Shown piece after piece: positions 8,203 through 59,731 of a stretch of 64,000 nt of DNA. The translations under genes were made by a program, and so were the position numbers. Every line of letters begins with the position of its first letter. Position 1 is the first letter of the stretch. The notes beneath the pieces are model-generated. The model saw only the letters and a program-made list of their open reading frames with translations. It ran no database searches and was not told where the DNA came from. Source of the DNA: Rebecca billardiae RCC1528 (Eukaryota > Protista > Haptophyta); assembly GCA_965240325.2 (NCBI GenBank), contig OZ251227.1, positions 1,364,001-1,428,000 of the forward strand, given 5' to 3'.

Positions 8203-9070
8203 ATGCGCGCGCTGCACGCGTCGGTGGAGGTGGCGGTACATGTGTGCTCCTTCTCCGACGTCGACCTACTCGCGCAGGGCCACTACCACCTGCGGATCTC
8301 CGTCCGGGCCGAGGAGGGCGAGAGCGCGCTGCCATTCGCGCTGCTCGGCGGCGCGCGTGTGCGCGCCAGCCTGCCCGCGCACATCGACGACGGCACGGCG
8401 ACGTTTGCGACGTCAAGCGTGTGCATGCGCTACTCGGGTGACACGTTCAGGCTCGACGAGATCGCGCTGTTCCGTCTCGAGCTGCCCATGCGCGAGCTCG
8501 TCGCGAGCCCGTCGGGCGAGGGCCCCGCCCTGCTCGTGCGCGTCGAGCTGATGCTGGCGCGCGGCGCGGCATTCGACGCGCCAAGCGCGGACGGGCGCGC
8601 GCCGACGGACGACGAGCGGCGTGCGCGCTTCGAGCCCGTCGCGGCGCGCACGCTGCGCCTCACGCGCCCGCTGCACAGCGGCAGCGAGTACTACCCGTTC
8701 CACGGAGACGACTTCCACTTTGCGCATGCGCCGATCAGTGTGCACGCCACGCTCATCAACGTGCGCCCGCGGAAGCCGCCCGAGCCGGCGGAGGGCGGCG
8801 GTGCGGGCGGCGGGCTGGGCGCGTCGCGCGCGGGCACGCGCCGCCCGGCCTCCGCCCCGCGCGCACCCGCCGCGCCGCCGCTCGCCCTGGACCGCGCGAT
8901 CGACGCGTGGCTGGGCGCGGCCGACGGCGCTTCGAGTGCGGAGCAGCAGCTGGAGGGCGCGGGCCTGGCCGAGTACGTGCACGCCGTGGCGAGGCTGGCG
9001 CGCGCGCGCGAGCGGCTGCGCAACAAGGTGCTGAGGCTGCGCGACATTCTCGAGCTCGCGCACGAGGGCG

Positions 9071-9103
<33 letters not shown>

Positions 9104-11297
9104 GCGGCGTCGGCGGCGGCGGCGGCGTCGGCGTCGCGAGCGCGGGGGGGTCGGAGCAGGACAGCCGGCCGTGGTGGTCTCGAGTGCTCTCACCCGCGTC
9201 GCCCGCCAGCCGCCGCGCCTCCGCGCCGGACGAGCCGTGGGCGGAGCCCATCGAGCTGCCCGCCGGGCTGCGCGCGCTGCCGCACGCCGAGTGGCTCGCC
9301 GAGCGCGACGCGGCGCTCGCAGCCGGCCGGCCGGCCGCGCCCGCAGCGACGGTGGACGTGGGCGACACGGTCGGCCGCGCGCACGTGCACGGCCAGCGCA
9401 CGGCGTCGACGCTCGCGCGCGACGCGGACGCCGCCGTGGGCACGCCGGTGGCGCGCGCGCGGCGCGGGCTCGCGATCGGCGAGGACGCGTGCGGCGGCGA
9501 GTTCAACGACGCGGCAGCCTCGCGCGCCGCGACGCTCGCCATGGCGGAGGTGCCGCCGCGCCGCACGTCGTACGTGCTCGTCGCGGACGGCGCGCTGCGT
9601 GGCGTGAGCGCGCGGCAGGCGCTCGCGCACCTGCACGCGCTCGCGTCGCAGCTCTTCGACGCGTGGTCGGCGCTGCTCGGGCTGCTCGGCGCGCACGGCC
9701 GCGCAATCTCGCACGTGCTGCGGCGCCGCTGGGAGGTGCGGCAGCGCGAGCGCTGGGGCGAGTCCGTCTTCAGCCAGATCGCCGAGCCATCGGCCGCGCG
9801 CGCGCCCGCGGACGGCGGGGCGTCGTGGCGCGCGCCGCGCTGGCTTGTGCCGTCGGCCGCCGCGCCCTCGTCGGCGCGCGCGCCGAACGGCGCGGCGCTC
9901 GCGCCCGCGCCGCCGCCGCGCGAGCTCGCCGACCGGCTGCGCCGCTCGGCGCACTTCTCCGGGCTGCCGCCGCTGCGGCTCGCGGACACGGCGGGCGACG
10001 GCGGCAGCATGGCGTCTCAGCCGATCCTGCTCGAGGCGCGCACGCCGCCGGCCGACTCCTTCGAGCTGGACGGGGAGGAGGAGGAGGGCGCGCCCACGCC
10101 CTCGCCAGAGCCGATGCTCGCGCGCGTGCGCGCCGCCGCCTCGGGTCGGCCGCAGCCGTCGCAGCCCAAGGTGGCGGTGCACCTCGTCGTGATGGTCCAC
10201 GGCTGGCACGGCTCGGGCCACGACCTGCGCACGCTCAAGAACTACATGCGCACGCTGCTGCCAGACCCGGCGCGGCCGAGCGCGGCCGAGCGCGCGGCGC
10301 GCGCGCGCGGCGCGCCGTCGCCGCCGCCGCCGCCGGTGCGCCGCTTCCTGCTGTCGACGGCGAACGAGGCGCGGACCGCCGAGGCGCCCTCGCTCGAGCT
10401 GGGCGCGGGGCTGGCCGCCGAGGTCCGCGCGTGGCTCCGGCGCGAGCGCCTCGAGCCGTCCGAGGTGGGCCGCGTCTCGTTTGTCGCCTTCTCGCTCGGC
10501 GGGCTGATCGTGCGAGCGGCGCTGGCGCACCCGGACTTGGCGCCGCTGCTGCCCAGGTGAGCGCGCGCGCGGAGGGCGGGTGGGGGCGCGGGCGTGAGCG
10601 TGGGCGGGTGGGCGGGCGCGCGCGCCGAGGACGAGCCACCGCGCCCCCCCGCCGCCCCCGCCGCCGCCCCCGCCGCGCCTGCAGGCTGCACACCTTCGTC
10701 TCCCTCGCGTGCCCGCACCTGGGCATCCGCGCGGGCGCGCACCCGCTCGTCGACAGCGGCGCGCGCGTGCTCAACCGGCTCAAGAGCAGCGCGCTGCTGA
10801 CCGAGCTGCTGCTGCACGACACGGCGGATCCGGCGCACTCGAGGGTCGCGCAGATGGCGGCGCAGCCGGTGCTCTCGCACTTCAAGCACGTGCTGCTGCT
10901 CTCCTCGCCGCAGGACGGCTTCATCCCGCACCACTCGAGCAGGATCGCGCACGACAGCGACGCCGCCGCCGATGCAAAGTGCGCGCCGCGCCGCCGCCGC
11001 GCCGGCGCGAGGGCACACTCGCACGCGCGCGATACGGGGAGCGTGCGGCCGACCGACGGCGCGCGCGCCGTCGCGCACAGGCTGCGCCCGGTGCTCGCCA
11101 AGATGATCAACCAGCTGAACGACTCGCTCGCGCGCGTGCACACCGTCCGGCTCGAGATTGTGTGGCCCGACGCGCGCACGGACCAGTCCATGAGCCTCTC
11201 GCACGCCATCGGCCACGCGTCCCACCTGCAGTTCCTCGAGAACACAACCTTCTACCGCCTCTTCCTGCAGACGATGGGGAGGCGCTACTTGGTGTGA
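8203..11297 (+). CDS. FAM135-like protein (DUF3657 plus DUF676 alpha/beta-hydrolase); introns 10557-10684 and probably 10979-11080
   Basis: N-terminus VEVAVHVCSFSDVDLLAQGHYHLR. C-terminus HLVVMVHGWHGSGHDLR, SFVAFSLGGLIVR, LHTFVSLACPHLG, FKHVLLLSSPQDGFIPHHSSRI and IGHASHLQFLE match FAM135. Confidence 0.88.
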
Positions 11298-13984: not shown

Positions 13985-14787
13985 GCACGCGGCGCCCACC
14001 CCCCATTGTACTCTACTCTGCATGCATGCCATCGACAGCTCGACTGACGCGAGAGCGGAGGAGCGCACGGACCGAGCGGGCGGGCCGTGCCGCCGCAGGG
14101 GCGTTTGCGCGCTCTGTGAGTGCGCGGGACCTCGCCATCGTCCGGCGGATGCAGCGAATGGACGAAGAGCGAGTGGGAGGATCCGGAAGCAGGCCCTTCG
14201 GGGCTCGTGCCGTCGCCGCTCGACTTCTGCCTCTCCGGCGTCCGAGTCACGCGCTACTTGAGAACTCGCCTCACGGCGATCCCTGTCCCTGATCCTGCGC
14301 TCAGCGCTGCATCGGGACGCCATCCGCCGATCCCGGCCCTGCAATCTGCAGCGCATCCAGTGACGGGCCGCAGGGTCCGCTGAGTGAGTCGTGTCTCGTG
14401 AGTCGTCTTCGTTAGCATAGCAGCATCAGACTTATGCGCAGCATGTCGTATTCGTATGGCAGCTATGACTGATGATCCTGACGGTCTGATGCCGATGCGC
14501 ACCCGCCCGACTAGCGGACTACCCGGTCTAGTTACAGCCGTCCGTTTACCGTTACGTCTACTACTCAGACCGTCTATAGTGGGGTCGTCAGAGCTCCGAC
14601 CGTTACACTCCCGAGTGACACAATCTCCCGAAATATCGAAATATGAAATATCTCCTCGGTTTGTAACTGTTTGAGTCCGCCGTTTGAGTTCGTTTACTTC
14701 GTGGCCTGTTTTATTTCTACCAGATTCCATTTACTATGTCACGGCGACAAGCCCGTGCCCGCCAGTGGGAATGGGCAGGGCAGTCGC

Positions 14788-16200
14788 CACCGGAAAGGGC
14801 TGCTGGCGGCTGTTTCCCGGGAACAAACTTGGTCCGCCAGCAGCCCTCCCGCCCCGCCCTATCAATACTGCTTGCACCCGCCGCTGGCGGCGCTCGTGGC
14901 GAGGCCCGCTGGCAGCCCCTCTCGCGCCTGGCGACAAATACGCCGCCCGCCCGTAGCTGGCGCTTGCAGAAAGGCCGCCAGCGGCCCTCCCGCCCCGTCA
15001 AATCAATATGCTTGCACCCGCCGCTGGCGGCGCTCGTGGAGTCGAGCGGCAAGGCCCGCTGGCAGCCCCTCTCGAGCCCGGCGACAAATACGCCGCCCAC
15101 CCGTAGCTGGCGCTTGCAGAAGGGCCGCCAGCGGCCCTCCCGCCCCGTCAAATCAATATGCTTGCACCCGCCGCTGGCGGCGCTCGTGGCAAGGCCCGCT
15201 GGCAGCCCCTCTCGCGCCAGGCGACAAATACGCCGCCCGCCCGTAGCTGGCGCTTGCAGAAAGGCCGCCAGCGGCCCTCCCGCCCCGTCAAATCAATATG
15301 CTTGCACCCGCCGCTGGCGGCGCTCGTGGAGTCGTGCGGCAAGGCCCGCTGGCAGCCCCTCTCGAGCCCGGCGACAAATACGCCGTCGGCCCGTAGCCGT
15401 AGGTAGCTGGCGCTTGCAGAAAGGCCGCCAGCGGCCCTCCCGCCCCGTCAAATCAATATGCTTGCACCCGCCGCTGGCGGCGCTCGTGGAGTCGTGCGGC
15501 AAGGCCCGCTGGCAGCCCCTCTCGAGCCCGGCGACAAATACGCCGTCGCCCGTAGCTGGCGCTTGCAGAAAGGCCGCCAGCGGCCCTCCCGCCCCGTCAA
15601 ATCAATATGCTTGTACTCTGCCGCTGGCGGCGCTCGTGGCGAGGCCCGCTGGCAGCCCCTCTCGCGCCTGGCGACAAATACGCCGCCCCGGCCCGTAGCT
15701 GGCGCTTGCAGAAAGGCCGCCAGCGGCCCTCCCGCCCCGTCAAATCAATATGCTTGCACCCGCCGCTGGCGGCGCTCGTGGCGAGGCCCGCTGGCAGCCC
15801 CTCTCGCGCCCGGCGACAAATACGCCGTCGCCCGTAGCTGGCGCTTGCAGAAAGGCCGCCAGCGGCCCTCCCGCCCCGTCAAATCAATATGCTTGCACCC
15901 GCCGCTGGCGGCGCGCGTGGCGAGGCCCGCTGGCAGCCCCTCTCGCGCCTGGCGACAAATACGCCGCCCGCCCGTAGCTGGCCGCTTGCAGAACGGCCGC
16001 CAGCGGCCCTCCCGCCCCGTCAAATCAATATGCTTGCACCCGCCGCTGGCGGCGCTCGTGGAGTCGTGGCGAGGCCCGCTGGCAGCCCCTCTCGCGCCTG
16101 GCGACGAAGGCATACGCCGTCGGCTCGTCGCCCGTAGCTGGTGCTTGCAGAAGGGCCGGCAGCAGTGCTCAAGCAGCCCTCCCGCCCCGCCAAATCATCA
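14788..16200 (+). repeat. Satellite S1 left array, about 10 units of 140-150 bp
   Basis: AATCAATATGCTTG recurs at about 15001, 15151, 15291, 15451, 15600, 15743, 15882 and 16023. The 150-bp units carry a 10-bp insert (GAGTCGTGCG; GAGTCGAGCG in one unit). Confidence 0.97.
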
Positions 16201-16749
16201 GCTTGGCAGCGCGCGCGCCCGCGCGAGGCCGCGCCGCGCGAGGCCGCCCCCGAGGGCGAGGCCGGCACTGTGGCACGCGCGCGCGCGCGCGCGGACGTGT
16301 TCGGAGCTCGCCCAGTCGCACTGATTCCCCCTGGGCTGCCTCAGCGGCCGGGGCCGCGGTGGGTGGCGCGGCGGATGACGCGGCGGACGGCGCGGCCAGC
16401 GGGCGCACGGCGTGGGCCGGCGGGCGCGGCGGCGGCCCCCACCTCTGCTGCGGCGCCGCCGCACACGCCGGCGGCGCGCTCCCACGAGTGGACGCTCTGT
16501 CTGGCTCCCGTCTCTCCGCGCCGCGCGAGCCCGCGCCGCCTGCGCCCGCCGCGCGCCTTAGCGGCGGGGCCGGCGGCGGCGTGGACGAGGTAGCTGTGCA
16601 GGCGGCGGCAGTGTCGGCAGCAGCGGCGGCGCGCCCCACGGGACGAGCATGCCCTTGACCCTCAAGCCGGTGCACGCGCCACCCGCGCACGGTCGCACTC
16701 AGCGGCACCGTGCCCCGCCCGCCGCGGTGGCTGACTCGACGTGAAACGG

Positions 16750-17290
16750 GGGACGGCGTAGTTGGCGTCGGCGTATTGGTTGATGCCCGGCGCAAGCGAG
16801 TCTGCCTGCTGCGGGCCTCGCCACAAGGCTCACACGTGCCGCCACGGCGGCGGGTGCAAACAGTATTGACGTGTTGGGGCGGGAGGGCGCTGCTGGCAGC
16901 CCTTCGACCTGCAAGCGCCATCAGCTGCTAGCTAGGCCTGGGGGCGACGGCGTATTGTCGCCAGGCGCGAGCGGGGCTGCCAGCGGGCCTCGCCACGAGC
17001 GCCGCCAGCGGCGGGTGCAAGCAGTCTTGATAGGGCGGGGCGGGAGGGCTGCCGGCGGACCAAGTTTGTTCCCGGGAAACAGCCGCCAGCAGGCGTTTGC
17101 GCGTACTATTAGCATAAGCTACAGCAGTAGCAGCAGTTATTAGTCTCAGTCGCGCGGGGAGGGCGTCTGCGGGCCCCGCCACTAACGCCGCCAGCGGCGC
17201 TTGGTTCAAGCAGTATCGAATAAGTACACTAGGGGGCGCCGGAGGGCTGCTGGCGGCCCAAGTTTGTTCCCGGGAAACAGCCGCCACCAA
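16750..17290 (-). repeat. Inverted S1 units, including two copies of the S1 terminal cap
   Basis: CCAAGTTTGTTCCCGGGAAACAGCCGCCA at about 17060 and about 17258 is the reverse complement of the cap at about 14804-14832. Confidence 0.88.
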
Positions 17291-17639
17291 GCCTTCGACC
17301 TGGTGGAGCTCGTGTCGGCTTTAACACGTACATGGCGGACGGGGTCCGCAGGCCGCAGGGTCAAGGATAGAGTCTCTGCTGGGGCCTTGAACATTACCAT
17401 GGAGGAGAGCATAGGGCCAAGACTGGTTGCTGGCCCCCGTGCCCAACTATGGCGTGCCCAACGCGGTGACGTCCGTACAGAACTACTCACCCGACACGGG
17501 CTCGCTGCTGCCACATCATGTGTCGCCATCACGCGCGCCTGCGACGCATCACGTCTGCTGCTTCGATGAGCATCAGGTCTGCAACAGACCAAGGAGGAGC
17601 AGCTCACGCGACAGCGCTTTTGCTAGCTGACCAGGGCTA

Positions 17640-20330
17640 TGACGGGTGTGTTGACGTCGTTGTCTCGGCATGTGTCTGCATCAGGCGGGCTTGCAGCATG
17701 CCACGACATCCCGCGGCGGCGAGTCCCCGACGAATAAACAGGGGCGCGAATAAGTACGACTCGTCCGGTTGGCCTACGTGAATCGTGATGTGCTGCTAGC
17801 ACTCGTGAGCTATCAGAGCATGCGCTTGGTGCAAAGCGTGCATGCAATGCTGCTTGCCGCCACCCAGCACACGTGCCGCCTAAGGTGCGCGAGCAGGCCC
17901 AGCCACGCGACGGCAATCGTCAAGGCCGACAAGGCGGTGCGGCGCGGGCGGCGCCGGGCGCGCTGCTCTGGTTGCCGACGATGAGCGGAGCAGCAGCGCA
18001 GCTGCTGGTGCTGCGCCGTGCGCGATCGGCGGATGAGCTACGCGCCAAGTGAGCGCGCATGCCGGCTCGCTGCTTGCCTGCGCACGGGCCGCCTGAGCTG
18101 TGCGAGCACGGGCCGCAGCGACGCAGCCGCGCAGCGGCAATCATCACGGTGGCGCGGCGCGGCGCCGGGCGTGCTGCTCCGGTTGCCGACGATGAGCGGA
18201 GCAGCAGCGCAGCAGCCGCTGCTGCGCCGTGCGTGATCAGTGCATGGAACTAGCGCTAAGTAGGCGCGCATGCCGGCTCGCTGCTTGCCTGCACACGGGC
18301 CGCCTGAGCTGTGCGAGCACGGGCCGCAGCGACGCAGCCGCTCAGCGGCAATCATCACGGCGGCGCGGCGCGGCGCCGGGCGCGCTGATCTGGTTGCCGA
18401 CGATGAGCGGAGCAGCAGCGCAGCAGCTGGTTCTGCGCCGTGCGCGATCGGCGGATGAGCTACGCGCCAAGTGAGCGCGCATGCCGGCTCGCTGCTTGCC
18501 TGCGCACGGGCCGCCTGAGCTGTGTGAGCACGGGCCGCAGCGACGCAGCCGCGCAGCGGCAATCATCACGGCGGCGCGGCGCGGCGCCGGGCGTGCTGCT
18601 CTGGTTGCCGACGATGAGCGGAGCAGCAGCGCAGCTGCTGGTTCTGCGCCGTGCGCGATCGGCGGATGAGCTACGCGCCAAGTGAGCGCGCATGCCGGCT
18701 CGCTGCTTGCCTGCGCACGGGCCGCAGCTGTGCGAGCACGGGCCGCAGCGTCGCAGCCGCTCGGCGGCAACATCATGGCGGCGCGGCGCGGCGCCGGGCG
18801 TGCTGCTCCGGTTGCCGACGATGAGCGGAGCAGCAGCGCAGCAGCCGCTGCTGCGCCGTGCGTGATCAGTGCATGGAACTAGCGCTAAGTAGGCGCGCAT
18901 GCCGGCTCGCTGCTTGCCTGCGCACGGGCCGCCTGAGCTGCGCGAGCACGGGCCGCAGCGACGCAGCCGCTCAGCGGCAATCATCACGGCGGCGCGGCGC
19001 GGGGCCGGGCGCGCTGCTCTGGTTGCCGACGATGAGCGGAGCAGCAGCGCAGCTGCTGGTTCTGCGCCGTGCGCAATCGGCGGATGAGCTACGCGTCAAG
19101 TGAGCGCGCATGCCGGCTCGCTGCTTGCCTGCACACGGGCCGCCTGAGCTGTGTGAGCACGGGCCGCAGCGACGCAGCCGCGCAGCGGCAATCATCACGG
19201 CGGCGCGGCGCGGCGCCGGGCGTGCTGCTCCGGTTGCCGACGATGAGCGGAGCAGCAGCGCAGCAGCCGCTGCTGCGCCGTGCGTGATCAGTGCATGGAA
19301 CTAGCGCTAAGTAGGCGCGCATGCCGGCTCGCTGCTTGCCTGCACACGGGCCGCCTGAGCTGCGCGAGCACGGGCCGCAGCGACGCAGCCGCTCAGCGGC
19401 AATCATCACGGCGGCGCGGCGCGGCGCCGGGCGCGCTGCTCTGGTTGCCGACGATGAGCGGAGCAGCAGCGCAGCTGCTGGTGCTGCGCCGTGCGCAATC
19501 GGCGGATGAGCTACGCGTCAAGTGAGCGCGCATGCCGGCTCGCTGCTTGCCTGCACACGGGCCGCCTGAGCTGTGCGAGCACGGGCCGCAGCGACGCAGC
19601 CGCTCAGCGGCAATCATCACGGCAGCGCGGCGCGGCGCCGGGCTCTCTGCTCTGGTTGCCGACGATGAGCGGAGCAGCAGCGCAGCAGCTGCTGCTGCGC
19701 CGTGCGCGATCGGCGGATGAGCTACGCGCCAAGTGAGCGCGCAAGCCGGCTCGCTGCTTGCCTGCGCACGGGCCGCAGCTGTGTGAGCACGGGCCGCAGC
19801 GTCGCAGCCGCTCGGCGGCAACATCACGGCGGCGCGGCGCGGCGCCGGGCGCGCTGCTCTTGTTGCCGACGATGAGCGGAGCAGCAGCGCAGCAGCCGCT
19901 GCTGCGCCGTGCGTGATCGGTGCATGGAACTAGCGCTAAGTAGGCGCGCATGCCGGCTCGCTGCTTGCCTGCGCACGGGCCGCCTGAGCTGCGCGAGCAC
20001 GGGCCGCAGCGACGCAGCCGCGCGGCGGCAACATCACGGCGGGGCGGCGCGGCGCCGGGCGTGCTGCTCCGGTTGCCGACAATGAGCGGAGCAGCAGCGC
20101 AGCAGCCGCTGCTGCGCCATGCGTGATCGGTGCATGAAGCTAGCGCTAAGTAGGCGCGCATGCCGGCTCGCTGCTTGCCTGCGCACGGGCCGCCTGAGCT
20201 GCGCGAGCACTGGCCGCAGCATCGCAGCTGCGCACTGGCAATCGTCAGGTACTCAATCGAGGCGGGTGCACAGCTGGTTGCTCACGATGAGCAGAGCAGC
20301 CGCGCAGCTGCTGCCGCAATGGGTATGATC
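17640..20330 (+). repeat. Satellite S2 left arm, about 11 units of 207-211 bp plus an outer ~280-bp segment
   Basis: GCCGGCTCGCTGCTTGCC recurs with unit starts near 18058, 18269, 18480, 18691, 18898, 19109, 19320, 19531, 19742, 19949 and 20159. Confidence 0.97.
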
Positions 20331-20959
20331 GTTTGTTACCAGCTCAACAGAGTGGGTGACTCCTACTTGATGCCACTGCGCCTTTCCTGAACACTGGCTC
20401 TACTTGACAATCAACATCTCAATACATATGACCGGAGCAGTGATCAGATGACTACATGTGTCGTCGAGCAACTACCAAGAGCAGAGACAGCCTACAGACG
20501 GTACCTTATTCGTAAGCCACCTGGTCAAAGTAAGCCGCAGCGCAAATGCGTATAGGCTACGTCCTGATTGCTGCTGTCGAGCAAGAAGACGACGCGGTCG
20601 ATGCGCCACGTAGTCGAGTCTGCAACTGCCCAGGGGCAACGACGCGTCCGACTACCAGGTGGTTGTAGTACTCCGCGGTCTGCCAAGTGGTCTTGACCGA
20701 TCAGCGAATGGGCCGTTGTCGTACGCGTTCCTCCGTGCGTAGAGCACCGAGCGCGCACACGGGAATGTACTGCCTTAGAGCATAACGGCTTGAGATGCAT
20801 CAGCGCAGCTGCCAGCTGCTGCTACTTGCTTGGCTGATGATGACGATTATTGTCATCAGCAGCAATATCAGCTGCTGTGAGCCCTGGCCAGCATTCGCGT
20901 CACCCACGCGCGGCTGCGCCTGGCGGCACACTCTGCACATGGCACGTATATGCTCGACG

Positions 20960-23862
20960 GTAGCAAGCTAAGGCGCGCGGCTAACTCGGCGCTCGTTCCA
21001 TGCCTCGATCGCATACCATACAAGGCCAGCAGATTCATCGTCTACTATCATCGGTGCACCCAGCGCCGCGCCGCGCCGCCTTGACGATTGCCGCAGCGTG
21101 GGTGTGCTGCTGCTGCACCTGCTCGCGCAGCTCAGGCGGCCCGTGCGCAGGCAGGCAGCGAGCCGGCATGCGTGCTCACACGGCGCGTAGCCCATCCTCC
21201 GATCACGCATGGCGGAGCACCAGCAGCTGCGCTGCTGCTCCGCTCATCGTCGGCAACCGGAGCAGCGCGCCCGGCGCCGCGCCACGCCGCCTTGACGATT
21301 GCCGCTGAGCGGCTGCGTCGCTGCGGCCCGTGCTCGCACAGCTCAGGCGGCCCGTGTGCAGGCAAGCAGCGAGCCGGCATGCGCGCCTACTTAGCGCTAG
21401 TTCCATGCACTGATCACGCACGGCGCAGCAGCGGCTGCTGCGCTGCTGCTCCGCTCATCGTCGGCAACCGGAGCAGCACGTCCGGCGCCGCGCCGCGCCG
21501 CCGTGATGATTGCCGCCGCGCGGCTGCGACGCTGCGGCCCGTGCTCGCACAGCTCAGGCGGCCCGTGCGCAGGCAAGCAGCGAGCCGGCATGCGTGCTCA
21601 CTCGGCGCGTAGCCCATCCGCCGTGCGCGCACGGAACAACACCGGAAGCTGCGCTGCTGCTCCGCTCATCGTCGGTAACCGGAGCAGCGCGCCTGGCGCC
21701 GCGCCGCGCCGCCTTGACGATTGCCGCCGTGCGACTACGTCGCTGCGGCCCGTGCTCGCACAGCTCAGACGGCCCGTGCGCAGGCAAGCAGCGAGCCGGC
21801 ATGCGCGCTCACTTGGCGCGTAGCCCATCCGCCGTGCGCGCACGAAACAACACCAGCAGCTGCGCTGCTGCTCCGCTCATCGTCGGCAACCAGAGCAGCG
21901 CGCCGGGCGCCGCGCCGCGCCGCCGTGATGTTGCCGCCGCGCGGCTGCGTCGCTGCGGCCCGTGCTCGCACAGCTCAGACGGCCCGTGCGCAGGCAAGCA
22001 GCGAGCCGGCATGCGCGCCTACTTAGCGCTAGTTCCATGCACCGATCACGCACGGCGCAGCACCAGCAGCTGCGCTGCTGCTCCGTTCATCGTCGGCAAC
22101 CGGAGCAGCGCGCCCGGCGCCGCGCCGCGCCGCCGTGATGTTGCCGCCGCGCGGCTGCGTCGCTGCGGCCCGTGCTCGCACAGCTCAGACGGCCCGTGCG
22201 CAGGCAAGCAGCGAGCCGGCATGCGCGCCTACTTAGCGCTAGTTCCATGCACCGATCACGCACGGCGCAGCACCAGCAGCTGCGCTGCTGCTCCGTTCAT
22301 CGTCGGCAACCGGAGCAGCGCGCCCGGCGCCGCGCCGCGCCGCCGTGATGTTGCCGCCGCGCGGCTGCGACGCTGCGGCCCGTGCTCGCACAGCTCAGAC
22401 GGCCCGTGCGCAGGCAAGCAGCGAGCCGGCATGCGTGCTCACTCGGCGCGTAGCCCATCCACCGATCGCGCACGGCGCAGCACCAGCAGCTGCGCTGCTG
22501 CTCCGTTCATCGTCGGCAACCGGAGCAGCGCGCCCGGCGCCGCGCCGCGCCGCCGTGATGTTGCCGCCGCGCGGCTGCGTCGCTGCGGCCCGTGCTCGCA
22601 CAGCTCAGGCGGCCCGTGCGCAGGCAAGCAGCGAGCCGGCATGCGCGCTCACTTGGCGCGTAGCCCATCCGCCGTGCGCGCACGGAACAACACCAGCAGC
22701 TGCGCTGCTGCTCCGCTCATCGTCGGTAACCAGAGCAGCGCGCCGGGCGCCGCGCCGCGCCGCCGTGATGTTGCCGCCGCGCGGCTGCGTCGCTGCGGCC
22801 CGTGCTCGCACAGCTCAGACGGCCCGTGCGCAGGCAGGCAGCGAGCCGGCATGCGCGCCTACTTAGCGCTAGTTCCATGCACCGATCACGCATGGCGCAG
22901 CACCAGCAGCTGCGCTGCTGCTCCGTTCATCGTCGGCAACCGGAGCAGCGCGCCCGGCGCCGCGCCGCGCCGCCTTGACGATTGCCGCCGCGCGGCTGCG
23001 ACGCTGCGGCCCGTGCTCGCACAGCTCAGGCGGCCCGTGCGCAGGCAAGCAGCGAGCCGGCATGCGTGCTCACTCGGCGCGTAGCCCATCCGCCGTGCGC
23101 GCACGGAACAACACCAGAAGCTGCGCTGCTGCTCCGCTCATCGTCGGTAACCGGCGCAGCGCGCCCGGCGCCGCGCCGCGCCGCCTTGACGATTGCCGCC
23201 GTGCGGCTACGTCGCTGCGGCCCGTGCTCGCACAGCTCAGGCGGCCCGTGCGCAGGCAAGCAGCGAGCCGGCATGCGTGCTCACTCGGCGCGCAGCTCAT
23301 TCGCCGATCGCGCACGGTGCAGCAGCAGCTGCTGCGCTGCTGCTCCGCTCATCGTCGGCAACCAGAGCAGCGCGCCGGGCGCCGCGCCGCGCCGCCTTCT
23401 TGGCGGCGGCTGCGACGCTGCGGCCCATGCTCGCACAGCTCAGGCGGCCCGTGCGCAGGCAAGCAGCGAGCCGGCATGCGTGCTCACTTGGCGCGCAGCT
23501 CATCCACCGATCGCGCACGGCGCAGCACCAGCAGCTGTGCTGCTGCTCCGCTCATTGTCGGCAGCCAGAGCAGCGCGCCCGGCGCCGCGCTACGCCGCCT
23601 TGATGTTTCCGCCGCGCGGCTGGGCGTGCTCGCACACCATAGGCGGCACGTGTGCTGGGTGGCGGAAAGCAGCAGTGCATACACGCTTTGCATTAAGCGC
23701 ATGCTCTGATTGCGCACTCACGATTCACGTAGGCCGCGTTGTCCTTGTTCGAGCCCCTGCTCATTCGTTCAGGACTCGCCGCGCGATGTCGTCGCATGCT
23801 GCAAGCCCGATTGATGCAGACAAACACTGTGACAACGCGACGACGAGGACACGCCTGTCGTA
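20960..23862 (-). repeat. Satellite S2 right arm (inverted), about 12 units of 210-211 bp plus an outer segment
   Basis: GCAGCGAGCCGGCATG recurs about every 210-211 bp from about 21155 to 23478. Region 23600-23862 is a diverged inverted copy of 17640-17920. Confidence 0.97.
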
Positions 23863-24194
23863 CTTTAACCTTGGCGAGCTCTCACAAGTGCCACTGTCGC
23901 GTGGGCATGCTGCCTCTTGACGTCGGCTGTCACGAGCAGGCCGATATTGTACACAGAGAAGACGTACAAGGCCACTGTCGCGCGGCAGCATACGTACAGT
24001 ATATCTTCGTCTTTCGAGGCTGATGTGTCGTCGATCGAGGCATGACGGGATGAGGCGGCACGATGTGGTAGCAGCAAACGCCCATGGCCAAGTGCCTACA
24101 GTAAACTTATAAGTTGGACGTGAAGGTCAGCACCCTACCTTGCGCATGTGCATGCTGTCGTCCATGCCCGTCCTGGTGGCTGCTCAGAGCGTCT

Positions 24195-26653
24195 GCTGGC
24201 CTCGCCACCAGCGCCGGCGGCGGCGGGTGCAAGCATATTGATTTGACGGGCGGGCGGAAGGGCTGCTGGCGGCCCTTCTGCAAGCGCCAGCTGCGGGCCG
24301 ACGGCGTATTTGTCGCCGGGCTCGAGAGGGGCTGCCAGCGGGCCTTGCCGCACGACTCCACGAGCGCCGCCAGCGGCGGGTGCAAGCATATTGATTTGAC
24401 GGGGCGGGAGGGCCGCTGGCGGCCTTTCTGCAAGCGCCAGCTACGGGCGGGCGGCGTATTTGTCGCCGGGCTCGAGAGGGGCTGCCAGCGGGCCTTGCCG
24501 CACGACTCCACGAGCGCCGCCAGCGGCGGGTACAAGCATATTGATTTGACGGGGCGGGAGGGCCGCTGGCGGCCCTTCTGCAAGCGCCAGCTACGGGCGG
24601 GCGGCGTATTTGTCGCCAGGCGCGAGAGGGGCTGCCAGCGGGCCTTGCCACGAGCGCCGCCAGCGGCGGGTGCAAGCATATTGATTTGACGGGGCGGGAG
24701 GGCCGCTGGCGGCCCTTCTGCAAGCGCCACTTACGTTACGGCGGGCGGCGTATTATTTTGTCGCCAGGCGCGAGAGGGGCTGCCAGCGGGCCTTGCCACG
24801 AGCACCTGCCAGCGGCGGGTGCAAGCATATTGATTGATTCGTGACGGCGGCCTCAGGCCCACTGACGGGGCGGGAGGGCCGCTGGCGGCCCTAGTCTGCA
24901 AGCGCCAGCTACGGGCGGGCGGCGTATTTGTCGCCAGGCGCGAGAGGGGCTGCCAGCGGGCCTTGCCACGAGCGCCGCCAGCGGCGGGTGCAAGCATATT
25001 GATTTGACGGGGCGGGAAGGCCGCTGGCGGCCCTTCGGCTTCTGCAAGCGCCAGCTACGGGCGGGCGGCGTATTTGTCGCCAGGCGCGAGAGGGGCTGCC
25101 AGCGGGCCTTGCCACGAGCGCCGCCAGCGGCGGGTGCAAGCATATTGATTTGACGGGGCGGGAAGGCCGCTGGCGGCCCTTCGGCTTCTGCAAGCGCCAG
25201 CTACGGGCGGGCGGCGTATTTGTCGCCAGGCGCGAGAGGGGCTGCCAGCGGGCCTTGCTACGAGCGCCGCCAGCGGCGGGTGCAAGCATATTTATTGATT
25301 TGACGGGGCGGGAGGGCCGCTGGCGGCCCTTCTGCAAGCGCCAGCTACGGGCGGGCGGCGTATTTGTCGCCAGGCGCGAGAGGGGCTGCCAGCGGGCCTT
25401 GCTACGAGCGCCGCCAGCGGCGCGGGTGCAAGCATATTGATTTGACGGGGCGGGAGGGCCGCTGGCGGCCCTTCTGCAAGCGCCAGCTACGGGCGGGCGG
25501 CGTATTTGTCGCCAGGCGCGAGAGGGGCTGCCAGCGGGCCTTGCTACGAGCGCCGCCAGCGGCGGGTGCAAGCATATTTATTGATTTGACGGGGCGGGAG
25601 GGCCGCTGGCGGCCCTTCTGCAAGCGCCAGCTACGGGCGGGCGGCGTATTTGTCGCCAGGCGCGAGAGGGGCTGCCAGCGGGCCTTGCCACGAGCGCCGC
25701 CAGCGGCGGGTGCAAGCATATTGATTTGACGGGGCGGGACCGCGGGAAGGCCGCTGGCGGCCCTTCTGCAAGCGCCAGCTACGGGCGGGCGGCGTATTTG
25801 TCGCCCGAGGCGCGAGAGGGGCTGCCAGCGGGCCTTGCCACGAGCGCCGCCAGCGGCGGGTGCAAGCATATTGATTTGACGGGGCGGGAAGGCCGCTGGC
25901 GGCCCTTCTGCAAGCGCCAGCTACGGGCGGGCGGCGTATTTGTCGCCAGGCGCGAGAGGAGCTGCCAGCGGGCCTTGCTACGAGCGCCGCCAGCGGCGGG
26001 TGCAAGCATATTTATTGATTTGACGGGGCGGGAGGGCCGCTGGCGGCCCTTCTGCAAGCGCCAGCTACGGGCGGGCGGCGTATTTGTCGCCAGGCGCGAG
26101 AGGGGCTGCCAGCGGGCCTTGCCACGAGCGCCGCCAGCGGCGGGTGCAAGCATATTGATTTGACGGGGCGGGAAGGCCGCTGGCGGCCCTTCTGCAAGCG
26201 CCAGCTACGGGCGGGCGGCGTATTTGTCGCCAGGCGCGAGAGGGGCTGCCAGCGGGCCTTGCCACGAGCGCCGCCAGCGGCGGGTGCAAGCATATTGATT
26301 TGACGGGGCGGGAGGGCCGCTGGCGGCCCTTCTGCAAGCGCCAGCTACGGGCGGGCGGCGTATTTGTCGCCAGGCGTGAGAGGGGCTGCCAGCGGGCCTT
26401 GCCACGAGCGCCGCCAGCGGCGGGTGCAAGCATATTGATTTGACGGGGCGGGAAGGCCGCTGGCGGCCCTTCTGCAAGCGCCAGCTACGGGCGGGCGGCG
26501 TATTTGTCGCCAGGCGCGAGAGGGGCTGCCAGCGGGCCTTGCTACGAGCGCCGCCAGCGGCGGGTGCAAGCAGTATTGATAGGGCGGGGCGGGAGGGCTG
26601 CTGGCGGACCAAGTTTGTTCCCGGGAAGCAGCCGCCAGCAGCCCTTTCTGGTG
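24195..26653 (-). repeat. Satellite S1 right array (inverted), about 17 units of mostly 140-150 bp
   Basis: CAAGCATATT(TATT)GATT recurs from about 24230 to 26430. The array ends in CAGCCCTTTCTGGTG (26653), mirroring CACCGGAAAGGGCTG (14788). Confidence 0.97.
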
Positions 26654-27928
26654 TAGACCCTTCTGGAATGGGTGTCACGCCCCGTTCAGTGTACCTCTCA
26701 CGGCCGATGGCGGCCCCCACGTGCGTGAGGAATGCGATTCGTGCACTCCTCGGTGACCGGTGAGTGCACGAATCCAGTTGCGGCGCTCGTCCGCCTCGTC
26801 GTCGTCGCACACGAGGTACACTGAAGAGCACGGGTCAGAAGCCAGATCTCTCTGCGCGCTCGCGCCCGCGTGGTGAGGCACTGGCAGGCTTGTTCTCATC
26901 ATCTTGGCCAAGACTGCAGCCTGCCAGATGCGCGATGACGCGTGTGCACGCCTTTCTGCGCGCCATGGGTGCGCGGGGCACGCACCTTGTCGTCATCTAC
27001 GCCGAGGAGGCCTGAACAACCGGCCCACCAACCTGCCGTGACAACGTTCAAATGCAGGCGGCAAGCTGCATGCGCAAACATCTCACGCTCGACAAGGAAG
27101 TGGCGGCGGAGCGAGTAGAGCTGGTATCGTTTGCAGTCCATCTGTCGTTCTACAATCCTGGTTCACCAACTGACACGGGCGCGACGCAGCTAAGGCAGAG
27201 TGCTTGCAGCTTGCAACGCGCCCGCAACCGCGGTTTGCTGCCGCGGCGCGGCGATCGTCACACTGCCGTGCGCTGCGAGTGACCCGTCTGTGTCATGGCG
27301 AAGCACCATGGCAAGGCTTAGCAGCAAGCATTGGCATGATCTTTAGCTACAGCTCAGCGCCCTAGTACGAACATGCGCCAACGACGTGCCATCACTACTC
27401 CGCAATCGCGCCGGTACCCACCACCAGCGGGCAAGCCGCCATTTTACCGCGTTGGCGAATGTCGCCGTTGGGCTCTGGTAGAAATAAAACAGGCCTCGTT
27501 TAGGCTTCAATTCCAGGGTGTAGCATCCGCCTGTGCCAATTTCAGACTGCCAAAATGTGATCTAGACGACGGTGCGATTCTTATGGTGCAAATAGCGAGA
27601 TCACCTTGGAGATCGTGTATCTCCCCTACTAATGTTGCCGAGATCGCGTCGAGATTGAGGCCGTGTATCATCATCTCCAGTATGTGACATCATTTTTTCG
27701 CAAACTTGTCAGCGTGACCGCCCAGCTCATTTCAGGCGAATATTGACATCCCGAAGTTTGAAATTGAGAGCCTCATCTCAAGACGACAGGAAGTTGGATT
27801 TTGGGCCACGCACCCCCCAGACTGATGATCCGACGGTCTGATGCCGATGCGCACCCGCCCGACTAGCGGACTACCCGGTCTAGTTACAGCCGTCCGTTTA
27901 CCGTTACGTCTACTACTCAGACCGTCTA

Positions 27929-28394
27929 TAGTGGGGTCAGAGCTCCGACCGTTACACTCCCGAGTGACACAATCTCCCGAAATCTCGAAATATGAAATAT
28001 CTCCTCGGTTTGTAACTGTTTGAGTCCGCCGTTTGAGTTCGTTTACTTCGTTTAGGCTTCAATTCCAGGGTGTAGAATCCGCCTGTGCCAATTTCAGACT
28101 GCCAAAATGTGATCTAGACGACGGTGCGATTCTTATGGTGCAAATAGCGAGATCACCTTGGAGATCGTGTATCTCCCCTACTAATGTTGCCGAGATCGCG
28201 TCGAGATTGAGGCCGTGTATCATCATCTCCAGTATGTGACATCATTTTTTCGCAAACTTGTCAGCGTGACCGCCCAGCTCATTTCAGGCGAATATTGACA
28301 TCCCGAAGTTTGAAATTGAGAGCCTCGTCATCTCAAGACGACAGGAAGTTGGATTTTGGGCCACGCACCCCCCAGTGGGGCTCTGACCCCTCTA
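27929..28394. mobile_element. ~466-bp MITE, MULE-like (18-bp imperfect TIR, 9-11-bp TSD)
   Basis: TAGTGGGGTCAGAGCTCC (27929-27946) and GGGGCTCTGACCCCTCTA (28377-28394) match at 16/18 inverted. They are flanked by the direct repeat CAGACCGTCTA at 27918-27928 and 28395-28405. Confidence 0.85.
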
Positions 28395-28546
28395 CAGACC
28401 GTCTAGCTAACAACGGTATATCGCTACTTAATAAAATAACTTAATACGATCGAGTGACGACATGCAATATGACGACGATATGCATTATGCTGTATGCATC
28501 GTCATCCGACGCCAACACATATATCGCGTCATCATCGTCATGCTGG

Positions 28547-30469
28547 TCAACTGCTGGCGGTGCTGGCGGGGCATGACGAGTTGGCCAGCGCCGCCACCTT
28601 GCGAGTGACCTTCCGCCAGTCGGCGTGCTCAGCCGCGTGCTCACCCGCGCGCTGGTAGTGCGCTTCGTCGGCCAGCTGGGCCGGGGCGGTGGGCGCGGCA
28701 GCACCACTGCTCGCGTGACCGTCGCGTGCGGCGGCGCCAGCGGTTGCGGTGCACACGAAGGGCTCGGCTGGCAGCTCGGCCTCGCGCACCAGCTCGGCGT
28801 GTTCCGCGGCAAACGCGCGCCAGTGGCACACGAGCGGGTCTCCGGGCGCGCCTGCCGCGGGCACAGCCACCATCTCGCGCGGCTGCGCTCCGTAGTCCAC
28901 GCCCTTGCCGGCGAAGTGGGCGGCGCGGCCGAACGGGCTCGCGTCGTCCTGCCACAGCTTGGCGATCGCGCGCGGCACGGGCATGCACGGCGTGCCGCCC
29001 GCGCTCGGCGCGCCCAGCTTCACCTGGCGGCACGCGCGCGTGCCCTGCAGCGCGGGCCGCACGTGAGGCTTGTACCGCGCGGAGCGGCGCGCGCACTCGG
29101 TGCCGTTGCGCGCGCGCGCGCGCCGCGGCGCCGACGTGTACTCGGTCATCGCGAGCTCGAGCGCGTCCTCCGCGCGCTGCTCGCGCCGCGCGCGCGCGAC
29201 CGCCGCGTCGATGCGCGCCCGCGGCCCGAGCGCCGCCTCGACCGCGCCCGCCGCCCTGCCCCCGCCAAAGTGCGACCACAGCGTCGCGTCGCTCGGCGCG
29301 ATGCGCGCGACGAGCGCGCGGCACGCCGCCTTGTCCGGGCACGCCTCGGCGAGCGTGACGGCGGGCGGCGTGGGCTGCCCCGGCCAGCCCGCGTGGTGCT
29401 TCGCGCTCGGCGCCGCGCGCGTCACCCGCGCCGGCGGCAGCCCCGTGCGCGCGCGCACGAGCAGCGCGTGCTCCTCGACGGCGGCCGCGTCGCCCACGTG
29501 ATCGAACGCGCGCAGCGCGGAGCGCAGCGCCTTGCCGTCCTGCTCGCTGAACGCGTTCCAGTGGCGGCACGCGGGGAGGGGCTCCGAGCCCTCGTACGGC
29601 GGGTAGTCGACGCACCAGCCGATCCCCGCGCGTAGCAGCGTCTGCGACTGCAGGTCGTGCGCGCTCGACGCCCAGTCGGTGAAGTTGCGGCCCCAGCGCC
29701 AGCGGCGCGCGAGCGCGACCGGCTCATCCGGCCCCGCTGCCTCGCACCGCACGAGCAGCCGGCGTCCGCGCACGCGCGCGCGCACGGCGGATGGCTCGGT
29801 CTGGTCGGCCGGCGCGCGCATCATGCGCTCGCACTGCCACGCGGCCAGCTGCCGCCCCATCACCGCCCACTTGTAGTACGACCAGTAGAAGGCGAAGGGC
29901 TCGCGCACGCGCGTCGAAAGCGTCAGCCGGCAGCCGCGCGGCGCGAGCGCGGCGCGCAGCCGGCTGAGCTGAGGGACGCTACCCGCGAAGTAGTCGACGG
30001 GGAAGTGGAGCTCAATGCACAGCCGCAAGAGCGTCGACGCGCTGAGCGGCTGCGTCTCGAGGTACTTGAGCAGCCCGATCCAGTTGCCGTGCTGCGGTGA
30101 ATACCCCCAGTAGAGGCACCGCCCCGCCGCCTGGTGCGCGAGCATGATGTTGCGCATCGTCGTGCCGCCCGTCTTCACGTTGTGCCGGTCGATCCAGATC
30201 GAGCAGTTCGGCTGGGGCCCAGCGTCCACTCGCAGCGTGCCGTCCGGCGAGAGGAGGAAGGCGTCGCCGGCGCCGACAGCAGCGGCCGCCGAATCTGCGC
30301 GTCTGCTCGCGCTGTTGTCCGCGGCGGCGGCGCCCGCTCCGGTCGGGGCCGGGGCCGGAGCCGCCACGTCCGCCACGTCGTGCACGGTGCGCCGGCCTTG
30401 CAGGCCGAGCAGCACCAGGCCAACCATCACCACCGCGAGCACCGCGCGGCCGACGCGCCCCATGCGCAT
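28547..30469 (-). CDS. Golgi-type (type II membrane) sulfotransferase-like protein
   Basis: N-terminal TM anchor; HNVKTGGTT (5'-phosphosulfate-binding loop) and TRVREPFAFYWSYY (3'-phosphate-binding R-x-P...S motif). Confidence 0.8.
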   Translation of the reverse strand: MRMGRVGRAVLAVVMVGLVLLGLQGRRTVHDVADVAAPAPAPTGAGAAAADNSASRRADSAAAAVGAGDAFLLSPDGTLRVDAGPQPNCSIWIDRHNVKTGGTTMRNIMLAHQAAGRCLYWGYSPQHGNWIGLLKYLETQPLSASTLLRLCIELHFPVDYFAGSVPQLSRLRAALAPRGCRLTLSTRVREPFAFYWSYYKWAVMGRQLAAWQCERMMRAPADQTEPSAVRARVRGRRLLVRCEAAGPDEPVALARRWRWGRNFTDWASSAHDLQSQTLLRAGIGWCVDYPPYEGSEPLPACRHWNAFSEQDGKALRSALRAFDHVGDAAAVEEHALLVRARTGLPPARVTRAAPSAKHHAGWPGQPTPPAVTLAEACPDKAACRALVARIAPSDATLWSHFGGGRAAGAVEAALGPRARIDAAVARARREQRAEDALELAMTEYTSAPRRARARNGTECARRSARYKPHVRPALQGTRACRQVKLGAPSAGGTPCMPVPRAIAKLWQDDASPFGRAAHFAGKGVDYGAQPREMVAVPAAGAPGDPLVCHWRAFAAEHAELVREAELPAEPFVCTATAGAAARDGHASSGAAAPTAPAQLADEAHYQRAGEHAAEHADWRKVTRKVAALANSSCPASTASS

Positions 30470-30655: not shown

Positions 30656-31336
30656 TCAGCTTGTCGGTTTGTCTGCCTCGCGCGTGTAGCCCTCCTCGCC
30701 CTCGTACTCCTGCTGGCTGTCCGCCTCGACATAGCGCCAGCCGCCGTCAGCCGCGCGTTCAAACGCCGAGCTCTCGTGGAGCGTGACCACACGCTCGCTC
30801 AGAATCTTCGAGCGGCTTTTGAGCGTGGCTGGCGCGCGCGCCATGTACTCGACGCTCATCTTACACCGCGCGCGCTCGCTCCCGCCGTCCGCCGGCGCCT
30901 CGTCCACCACCTCGCCCAGCTGCAGCGACTTGAAGTTGTACGAGCCCATGTAGCTCAGCAGCTCCTTGCGCAGACCCTTAGTATCGGCAGCGGCCTTCGC
31001 GTGCGCGGGCGAGAGCAGGAAGTCGGGCAGGCGGTACTGGTACGCGGTGAAGCGCGCGCGTATGAGCTCGTGGACGCTCGTCGCGAGCTCGCCGTCGTGC
31101 AGCCGGCTGCAGCACGAGCCGTACGGCTGTCCGCTGCCGCAGCCGCACGGCGTGTCGGCCGTCGGTCGTCGATCGCCCGACGTGCGCGCGCGACCAAAGC
31201 CTTTCGAGGCGGCGGCGAGCGGCTGTGCTCGGCGGGTGATCGCGCACCGGCGGAGCGGCAACGCGGTCTGGCTGCCAACCGCATGCGCGAAGCCCGCGCC
31301 CGTCCAGCCGAGGAGGAGGAGAAAGCCCGTCCACAT
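30656..31336 (-). CDS. YchJ/SEC-C-motif protein, probably plastid-targeted
   Basis: PCGCGSGQPYGSCC (SEC-C), ELIRARFTAY and LHESSAFER..GGWRYVEAD match YchJ. Hydrophobic signal-like start MWTGFLLLLGW. Confidence 0.85.
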   Translation of the reverse strand: MWTGFLLLLGWTGAGFAHAVGSQTALPLRRCAITRRAQPLAAASKGFGRARTSGDRRPTADTPCGCGSGQPYGSCCSRLHDGELATSVHELIRARFTAYQYRLPDFLLSPAHAKAAADTKGLRKELLSYMGSYNFKSLQLGEVVDEAPADGGSERARCKMSVEYMARAPATLKSRSKILSERVVTLHESSAFERAADGGWRYVEADSQQEYEGEEGYTREADKPTS

Positions 31337-31661
31337 CGCGAATGGCGGCCAGCCGGCAGCCGGGCACGTCGCGGGGCGGCCGTGCAAGATCGGCGATCGC
31401 CCGGACCAGCCCGCGCTTACCCCGCCGGCGCGGCGGGCCGCTGACCTTCACCTTGCCACGCCAGCCGCTCGCGTCTCGAGAGGCGGACGCTGGCATCTCG
31501 GCGCGCTCGCACAGGCCGCCGCTGGCAGGTTCCCGCCTCCACGGGGGGACCGAGGGGCCTGGTCTGCGCGCTCGGCTCCTGCCTCCGCGCCGCGCACGCG
31601 CCACCTTGCGCCTCGCTCCTCCCCGCCGCGGCATTTTGCGCCGCGCGACGGCGACGGCCCG

Positions 31662-33065
31662 ATGGCGAGCGCCGAGGGCAAGTTTGCGCCCGGCCAGATC
31701 GTGTTCGTGCCGGACGATGAGCGCGTGTGCCGCGCGTGCCGCGTGATCCGGTGCAACGGCTACCCGCCGCGCATGGCGATCACGCTCGAGCCCGTCGACG
31801 GCTCGCCCGCCTTCGAGCCGAGCGCCGAGGCGGCGGCCGGCATCGAGGAGGCGGATGCGCTCTCACTCGCCGGCTCGCCCGACCTGTCCAAGCTGACGCA
31901 CCTGAGCGAGTACGCGATCCTGCACGACCTGCGCACGCGGTACGAGCGCGACGAGATCTACACCAACGTCGGCACCATCCTCGTCTCCATCAACCCGTTC
32001 AAGGACGTGAGCGGCTCGGACGCAGACGTGCTGGCGCGCGCGCGCGCGGCGGACGCGCGCGCGTGGGACGAGCTGCCGCCGCACGTGTTCGTGCTGTCGG
32101 AGCACGCGTACCGCGACGCGCTGCGCGAGCGGCGGCCGCAGTCCATCCTGATCAGCGGCGAGTCGGGCGCGGGCAAGACCGAGTCCACCAAGCTGTGGCT
32201 GCGCCACCTGGTGAGCCGCTCGCAGGGCGCGGGCAGCGCGGCCGGCTCGGCCGCCTCGCAGATCGAGGCGTCGCTGCTCGCGTGCAACCCGGTGCTCGAG
32301 TCGTTCGGCAACGCGGCGACGACGCGCAACCACAACTCCTCGCGCTTCGGCAAGTGGATCGAGGTCTCGCTCGACGCGAGCGCGGGCGGCAGCATCTGCG
32401 CCGCTCGGCTCACGTCGTATCTGCTCGAGCGCTCGCGCGTGACGGGGCACGCGCGCGGCGAGCGCAGCTTCCACGCCTTCTACCAGCTGCTCGCGGGCGT
32501 GGCGGCGGACGGCGGGCTGGGCGCGCGGCTGCGCCTCGAGCCGCGCCCCGCGGCGTACCGCTACCTCCGCCCGGCCGGCGCCGACGACGCGCCGGCGCTC
32601 GCGCGCGCGGACGCCGAGCGGCGCGGCCAGTGCTCGCGCGCGCTCGCGAGCCTGGGGCTGGGCGGCGCGGAGGAGGCGGCGCTCGACGCGGTGGTCGCGG
32701 CGGTGCTGCACGTGGGCAACGTGGGCTTCGAGGCGGCGAGCGCGGGCGAGCACCAGGACGACGGCGCCGCCGTCTCGCCCGCCAGCGCCGCCGACCTCGA
32801 CGCGACAGCCTTCCTGCTGGGCGTGGGCGCGGAGTCGCTCGCTGACGCTCTCACGGTGCGGCTTGTCGGTCGGTTCCCCGCCGTGCGCGTGCCGCTGTCG
32901 CTCGCGCACGCGAACGCGCAGCGCGACGCGCTGGCGCGTGCGCTTTACGCCGCGCTCTTCGACGACCACCTCTTCGCCGAGCTCAACCGCCAGATGCACG
33001 GCCTCTCGCACGGCGGCGGCGGCGGCGGCGGCGGTGGCGGCAGCGGCGGCGGCGGCAGCGGCGGC

Positions 33066-33096
<31 letters not shown>

Positions 33097-35418: not shown

Positions 35419-35453
<35 letters not shown>

Positions 35454-35866: not shown

Positions 35867-35901
<35 letters not shown>

Positions 35902-51642: not shown

Positions 51643-51673
<31 letters not shown>

Positions 51674-59699: not shown

Positions 59700-59731
<32 letters not shown>

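What the first reader, a model, noticed from the sequence alone, without database searches (positions are those of the whole stretch)
14703..27495. 12.8-kb transposon built as a giant palindrome of two nested satellite pairs
Seen: TIR - S1 array (+) - filler - S2 arm (+) - unique ~630-bp core - S2 arm (-) - S1 array (-) - filler - TIR. It has perfect 22-bp TIRs, a TCGT target duplication, and no recognisable transposase. Roughly 9-10 kb is mirror-image tandem repeat. Established: Foldback-type elements have long modular inverted arms. I cannot match GGCC termini plus a non-TTAA 4-bp TSD to a superfamily (Harbinger uses 3-bp TWA, hAT 8 bp, MULE 9-11 bp; Sola, Ginger and Academ have 3-4-bp TSDs but other typical termini). 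Inference: a possibly undescribed non-autonomous family that moves satellite arrays as a unit. Best candidate for a new system in this window.
Basis: partly seen in the sequence, partly recalled or inferred. Interest (0 to 1): 0.88.

Follow-up and report, generated by a model that had tools for sequence, protein, structure and literature searches.

The report
Satellite-laden foldback transposon in an alga
A real, recently inserted 12.8-kb jumping gene with no protein of its own carries two kinds of tandem repeat in roughly mirrored arms; this layout is a known kind, its ends are compatible with known transposon groups, and the enzyme that moves it is still unidentified.

Summary
The element is real. 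It spans 14703-27495, has perfect 22-bp TIRs, and duplicated 4 bp (TCGT), shown by an empty paralogous site at 27820-28375. The host is a pavlovophyte-like alga. Contigs from another sample hold many variants of the right end, so it belongs to a dispersed family. It is not a true giant palindrome: the arms have different repeat numbers, carry arm-specific variants and show no mirror order, which also argues against an assembly artefact. A third, decayed copy of the 140-bp satellite sits inside. I found no coding signal. Best reading: a non-autonomous cut-and-paste foldback transposon (Tetris/Galileo architecture) whose inner 211-bp satellite pair is probably an older passenger foldback; I could not find that passenger's ends. 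The claim that no superfamily fits is too strong: Sola (4-bp TSD, variable ends) and Kolobok (RR..YY ends; KolobokP TSDs 3-5 bp) are both compatible. Membership cannot be tested without the transposase. The scan has already noted many satellite-bearing foldbacks on other DNA of this genome, one with two nested satellites (unchecked notes). Verdict: a new variant of a known kind, of modest interest.

The parts
14699..14702 (.). left target-site duplication TCGT
   Evidence: single copy in the empty paralog
14703..14724 (+). left 22-bp TIR
14725..14787 (+). left subterminal spacer; only weak, non-significant likeness to the right subterminus
   Evidence: p=0.11
14788..16197 (+). S1 left arm: array-start motif with CCCGGG-centred palindrome (14814), then about 9 units of 140 bp, last one decayed
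16198..16763 (.). GC-rich (80%) filler; low-complexity open frames, no coding signal, no Pfam or Atlas lead
17495..17938 (+). outer, non-tandem part of the left S2 arm; matches 23623-24087 inverted, identity falling outward from 92% to 70-80% (gapped)
17939..20317 (+). S2 left array, 11 units of 211 bp, two unit subtypes
20318..21055 (.). unique core, 55% GC, non-coding, with a small internal hairpin near 20808-20882
21059..23622 (-). S2 right array, 12 units of 210-211 bp
23623..24087 (-). outer, non-tandem part of the right S2 arm
24195..26653 (-). S1 right arm, about 17 units, ending in the array-start motif (26609)
26654..27473 (.). right subterminal region (820 bp) with a strong hairpin at about 26685-26825; multi-copy and variable in sample X1
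   Evidence: z=-4.5
27474..27495 (-). right 22-bp TIR
27496..27499 (.). right target-site duplication TCGT
14467..14702 (+). left part of the interrupted host repeat unit (continues at 27500-27820)
27820..28375 (+). intact tandem paralog of the host unit, which is the empty site; about 99% identical to the interrupted copy

Best explanation
A non-autonomous cut-and-paste DNA transposon of foldback architecture with a layered interior. SHOWN: it inserted as one 12,793-bp block into one of two tandem copies of a 556-bp host repeat, duplicating 4 bp; it encodes no detectable protein; its right end belongs to a dispersed, variable family. INFERRED from established TIR-transposon biology: a DDE transposase encoded elsewhere binds the 22-bp TIRs, excises the block and inserts it with a 4-nt stagger. 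On ends alone my odds are Sola about 35%, Kolobok about 25%, PHIS about 15%, other known about 10%, undescribed about 15% (judgement, not a test). INFERRED: the S1 arrays are the element's own arm repeats, possibly secondary transposase-binding sites as in Galileo, and they grew separately in each arm by slippage or unequal exchange. The S2 pair with its decayed 440-bp outer arms is an older, separate foldback element carried as a passenger.
For: TIR, TSD and empty site. Recent insertion: TIRs and TSDs perfect, host paralogs about 99% identical. Family: 49 contigs of sample X1 lie on 26620-29400, spread over identity bands from 80 to 100%, with up to 11 contigs at one place. Cover runs over the right subterminal region, stops at 27497 and is absent over the next 400 bp and the neighbouring gene. 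One contig reaches the TIR and has 27 further letters that do not fit, read as a second insertion site (side inferred from how record 4 is reported). No coding. Separate arm evolution. Two layers of different age: outer TIR 100% identical, S2 outer arms 70-92%; S1 and S2 are unrelated. Precedent: PMC4079207. Unchecked scan notes describe stand-alone foldbacks with opposed ~214-bp satellites and different ends elsewhere in this genome.
Against: No termini or TSD could be found for the inner S2 element: the best candidate pair (17362/24142) scored at the 55th percentile of control pairs. I could not test whether the 214-bp satellite of the earlier notes is homologous to S2. Motif sharing between subtermini and S1 was not significant (p=0.21), so the binding-site role is only an analogy. 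No transposase was found, and no second full-length copy was seen. The identity of sample X1 is coded, and contig depth is not copy number.
Confidence: 0.62

Rival explanations
1. One integral design: both satellite pairs are standard parts of this family, built up inside a single lineage by arm elongation, with no nested insertion.
For: No TSD or termini at the S2 boundary. The S2 pair sits centred between S1 arrays. An unchecked note reports another foldback with two nested satellites (s1-339000).
Against: The S2 outer arms are far more decayed than the outer TIRs. S1 and S2 are unrelated. The extra S1 remnant at 16764-17295 makes the interior asymmetric. Notes report ~214-bp satellite foldbacks with other ends.
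Confidence: 0.18
2. A macro-transposon or chimera: the left end of a short S1 foldback (14703 to about 17300) and the right end of a second family member were used together by the transposase and carried the S2 foldback lying between them.
For: S1(+), filler, S1(-) at 14788-17295 already forms a small foldback with its own outward array-start motifs. The two subtermini differ in length (63 vs 820 bp).
Against: No convincing relic TIR behind the S1 remnant (p=0.23). Asymmetric subtermini are normal for deletion derivatives of autonomous elements (own knowledge).
Confidence: 0.12
3. The ends are two bases further out (14701-27497), the element makes no target duplication, and the 4-bp repeat is partly element sequence (Spy-like or recombinase-like insertion).
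For: This parse is formally allowed by the empty site, with one TIR mismatch. The X1 contig matches exactly to 27497 before diverging. A note reports a no-TSD TIR element in this genome (s1-341195).
Against: It needs a TIR mismatch plus a roughly 1-in-256 coincidence between target and element ends. The 4-bp parse has zero mismatches. Two shared flank bases are also explained by target preference or by chance (about 1 in 16).
Confidence: 0.05
4. Assembly or long-read artefact (foldback chimera or collapsed repeats).
For: No read or contig spanning the element could be examined. Short-read contigs of the same or a nearly identical strain stop at the edge of the host repeat (28368).
Against: A foldback chimera gives identical mirror arms; these differ in unit number and sequence and show no mirror order. 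An artefact would not create a TSD that matches an empty paralog. Flanking assembly agrees with independent contigs at 99.7-99.9%.
Confidence: 0.03

Closest known systems
Foldback elements with tandem repeats in their arms: Tetris (Drosophila virilis), Galileo, FB (PMC4079207)
   Same: Non-coding, long modular inverted arms: flanking domain, variable number of tandem repeats (about 220 bp in Tetris), inner domain, unique middle; flanked by a TSD; autonomous partner not found for Tetris either.
   Different: TSD is 4 bp here against 8-10 bp in Tetris; two unrelated satellite pairs rather than one; 12.8 kb long; the true outer TIR is only 22 bp, with unlike spacers between TIR and array on the two sides.
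Sola superfamily (PMC10741241; PMC3627910)
   Same: 4-bp TSD, variable termini, short TIRs allowed, size range reaches over 15 kb. A Sola-type transposon was noted elsewhere in this genome (unchecked, s1-358223).
   Different: No transposase to compare. The Sola2 examples read have AT-rich AWWT TSDs, whereas this one is TCGT. From memory, Sola2 ends are GRG and Sola3 ends GAG with TTAA, neither matching; Sola1 is the open option.
Kolobok superfamily, incl. KolobokP (PMC9587614)
   Same: RR..YY termini (here GG..CC) and a 4-bp TSD; KolobokP families make 3-4 or 4-5 bp TSDs; known from algae and protists.
   Different: Canonical Kolobok is TTAA-specific, which is not met. KolobokP has long terminal direct repeats, which are absent here.
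PHIS superfamily: PIF/Harbinger, Tourist, Pangu, Nuwa (PMC4482050; PMC12730594)
   Same: Short TIRs starting with G or GG. From memory, the first nine bases resemble PIF/Tourist TIR starts.
   Different: PHIS groups make 0-, 2- or 3-bp TSDs. The symmetric, mismatch-free parse here is 4 bp; 2- and 0-bp parses need a TIR mismatch and a 3-bp parse needs asymmetric ends.

Membership tests
TIR (cut-and-paste) DNA transposon, non-autonomous | terminal inverted repeats | tested here: met
   22 bp perfect
TIR (cut-and-paste) DNA transposon, non-autonomous | target-site duplication confirmed by an empty site | tested here: met
TIR (cut-and-paste) DNA transposon, non-autonomous | dispersed related copies | tested here: met
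   right end only: many variant contigs in sample X1, cover ending at the TIR; full-length copies not seen
TIR (cut-and-paste) DNA transposon, non-autonomous | no own transposase | tested here: met
   a very decayed remnant cannot be excluded
Foldback architecture (Tetris/Galileo/FB type) | long inverted arms with internal tandem repeats of variable number around a middle domain | tested here: met
   against the description in PMC4079207
Mutator/MULE (most foldbacks) | 8-11 bp TSD | tested here: not met
   4 bp against PMC6446971
Sola | 4-bp TSD | tested here: met
Sola | AT-rich AWWT target (Sola2 examples) | tested here: not met
   TCGT; one site only, in a genome of about 70% GC
Sola | Sola-type DDD transposase in a TIR-sharing copy | not testable with these tools
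   no genome-wide DNA search available; no autonomous copy found
Kolobok | RR..YY termini | tested here: met
   GG..CC
Kolobok | TTAA-specific TSD (canonical groups) | tested here: not met
   TCGT
KolobokP | long terminal direct repeats | tested here: not met
   no direct repeat joins the two ends in the self-comparison
Kolobok | Kolobok DDD/E transposase in a TIR-sharing copy | not testable with these tools
   no autonomous copy found
PHIS (PIF/Harbinger, ISL2EU, Spy, Pangu, Nuwa) | 0-, 2- or 3-bp TSD | tested here: not met
   best parse is 4 bp; 0- and 2-bp parses are possible only with a TIR mismatch; one site only
Ginger | TG..CA termini | tested here: not met
   GG..CC
CMCT (CACTA, Chapaev, Transib) | CA..TG termini in most cases, 2-5 bp TSD | tested here: not met
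   termini GG..CC
Inner S2 pair as a separate nested transposon | own termini and own TSD | tested here: inconclusive
   none significant; arms are decayed, so an old TSD may be lost

The most novel reading that the evidence does not exclude
The 22-bp GG..CC ends with a non-TTAA 4-bp duplication belong to an undescribed transposase lineage of pavlovophyte algae, and that lineage routinely mobilises 10-kb-plus blocks of paired satellites, so spreading satellite arrays between genes.
Probability: 0.13. Interest if true: 0.6.

Novelty: new variant of a known kind. Interest (0 to 1): 0.3.

Why it matters
It is a clean, dated example (filled and empty site side by side) of a transposon carrying about 8.6 kb of satellite DNA into a gene-dense region. 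It also shows that the two arms of a foldback homogenise their repeats mostly separately. It extends satellite-bearing foldback architecture, mostly tied to Mutator and P elements with 7-11 bp TSDs, to an element with a 4-bp TSD in a little-studied algal class. It becomes more important only if the partner transposase proves to be a new lineage.

Tried and rejected
Exact 22-bp TIR: absent from metagenome and viral contigs; one hit in prokaryote genomes lies inside a bacterial ORF with no partner, so it is chance. The 18-bp TIR gave 35 metagenome hits, none extending or paired, so chance. The S1 start motif is absent from viral contigs. Filler ORFs: no Pfam hit, no codon signal against host-gene controls, no Atlas lead; the single phmmer hit P0009 is a repeat protein matching 31 residues many times, rejected. 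Variant places in the right filler show no codon pattern (p=0.47; crude test). CAAGG-type ends for the inner S2 element, a relic TIR behind the S1 remnant, and a motif shared by subtermini and S1 all failed their controls. The S1 unit does not fold better than shuffles (z=-0.65). No Rfam match. Look-up of the symporter's last exon for a junction-spanning contig found nothing. The findings search by sequence was blank. The primary Sola, PIF and superfamily-table papers were not held, so Sola subgroup termini and the PIF/Tourist likeness rest on memory. One paper was fetched by a wrong DOI and not used.

Full report
Setting. The window is from a very GC-rich eukaryote. A flanking glycosyltransferase has its best non-self match in Diacronema lutheri at 62%, which points to a pavlovophyte haptophyte. 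Short-read contigs from two public runs match the flanking assembly at 99.7-99.9%. The element lies between the 3' ends of two convergent genes: a sodium:solute symporter (stop at 13984) and an orphan 640-aa ORF (stop at 28547).

Ends and target. A perfect 22-bp inverted repeat sits at 14703-14724 and 27474-27495 and occurs nowhere else in the window. The host sequence is a 556-bp unit duplicated in tandem: the first copy (14467-14702 plus 27500-27820) is interrupted, the second (27820-28375) is intact, and the two are about 99% identical. This gives a true empty site. Of the parses it allows, only the one with a 4-bp TCGT duplication has mismatch-free TIRs; 2-bp and 0-bp parses each need a mismatch. 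Perfect ends and near-identical paralogs indicate a recent insertion (inference).

Interior. Tandem arrays total 8.56 kb. S1 and S2 are unrelated.

Not a true palindrome. Units carry arm-specific variants, and within-arm distances are smaller than between-arm distances (p=0.004 for S1, 0.026 for S2). Units at mirror positions are no more alike than random pairs. So the arrays grew and homogenised mostly within each arm. A few inner units of the right arms resemble left-arm types (S1 R15-R16, S2 R10), which suggests shared ancestry or occasional exchange (inference). This also argues against a read-foldback artefact, which would give identical arms.

No protein. The fillers score like intergenic DNA in all six frames under a codon model that recognises host genes. 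Pfam, Atlas and phmmer searches of the longest frames gave nothing credible.

It has relatives. One public sample, X1, holds part of the right end. Laid on 26620-29400, it gave 49 contigs spread from 80 to 100% identity. They cover the right subterminal region, stop at 27497, and leave the next 400 bp and the neighbouring gene bare. One contig ends at the TIR with 27 unmatched letters. Judged by how another minus-strand record is reported, these lie outside the TIR, which means a second insertion site whose flank also begins with TC. Caveats: the sample is coded, depth is not copy number, a filter drops some contigs, and only the right end was laid.

How it most likely works. A transposase encoded elsewhere recognises the 22-bp ends, cuts the block out and inserts it with a 4-nt stagger (inferred from established TIR-transposon biology). 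The interior looks layered: the outer ends are perfect, whereas the outer parts of the S2 arms have decayed to 70-92%. I read the S2 pair as an older foldback carried as a passenger. Unchecked notes of this scan describe stand-alone foldbacks with opposed ~214-bp satellites and other ends in this genome, but I could not test their homology to S2. My search for the inner element's own ends and TSD failed its control, so nesting is likely but not shown. A role of S1 as extra transposase-binding sites is an analogy to Galileo (PMC4079207); my motif test was not significant.

Comparison with what is known. [quoted passage not shown] It fails the Mutator TSD test and the Ginger and CMCT termini tests. 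It meets Sola's 4-bp TSD, and Sola ends are variable, though the Sola2 examples have AT-rich targets. It meets Kolobok's RR..YY ends but not TTAA specificity; KolobokP shows that the group can make other 3-5 bp duplications, but its direct repeats are absent here. The TIR start recalls PIF/Tourist (memory), but PHIS groups make 0-3 bp duplications. I therefore file it in no superfamily. Repbase assigns non-autonomous elements by matching TSD length and terminal sequence to known families (PMC4455052), which I could not run.

Verdict. Real, young and structurally striking, but a variant of a known kind in a genome where the scan has noted many satellite-bearing foldbacks. What remains open is the transposase. 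Interest 0.3; chance of a new transposase lineage about 13%.

Noticed in passing
window 27901-28416 (and the interrupted, right-truncated copy starting at 14549): The host repeat contains a MITE-like element of about 516 bp with imperfect ~45-bp inverted ends flanked by TA, as in Tc1/mariner. The 556-bp tandem duplication is offset from it: it starts 80 bp upstream and stops 41 bp before the right end. Sample X1 holds diverged relatives over 27922-28302.
   Followed up: partly
window 26685-26825: Nested hairpin in the right subterminal region, z=-4.5 against shuffles; covered by an identical 134-nt contig in X1. Function unknown.
   Followed up: partly
window 17939-23622: S2 has two unit subtypes (about 88% to each other, 95-98% within) interleaved in both arms, hinting at a higher-order repeat.
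   Followed up: partly
window 28547-30469 (-): 640-aa ORF with host-like codon signal but no Pfam hit and no homolog except itself among the candidates scored (length-limited search).
   Followed up: partly
window 41670-45143: Long Pro/Ala-rich low-complexity ORF; a C-rich 15-bp repeat (42546-43226) is followed by a G-rich one (43503-43989), forming a loose inverted pair.
   Followed up: no
window 8203-11297, 30966-36287, 49598-54379, 59393-62863: Ordinary neighbours: FAM135/DUF676 esterase-like gene split over two frames, myosin, RICTOR, WD40 protein.
   Followed up: no
window 16101-16658 (+): Ala/Gly-rich open frame in the GC-rich filler that could be a captured gene tail; no support from codon model, Pfam or Atlas.
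   Followed up: yes
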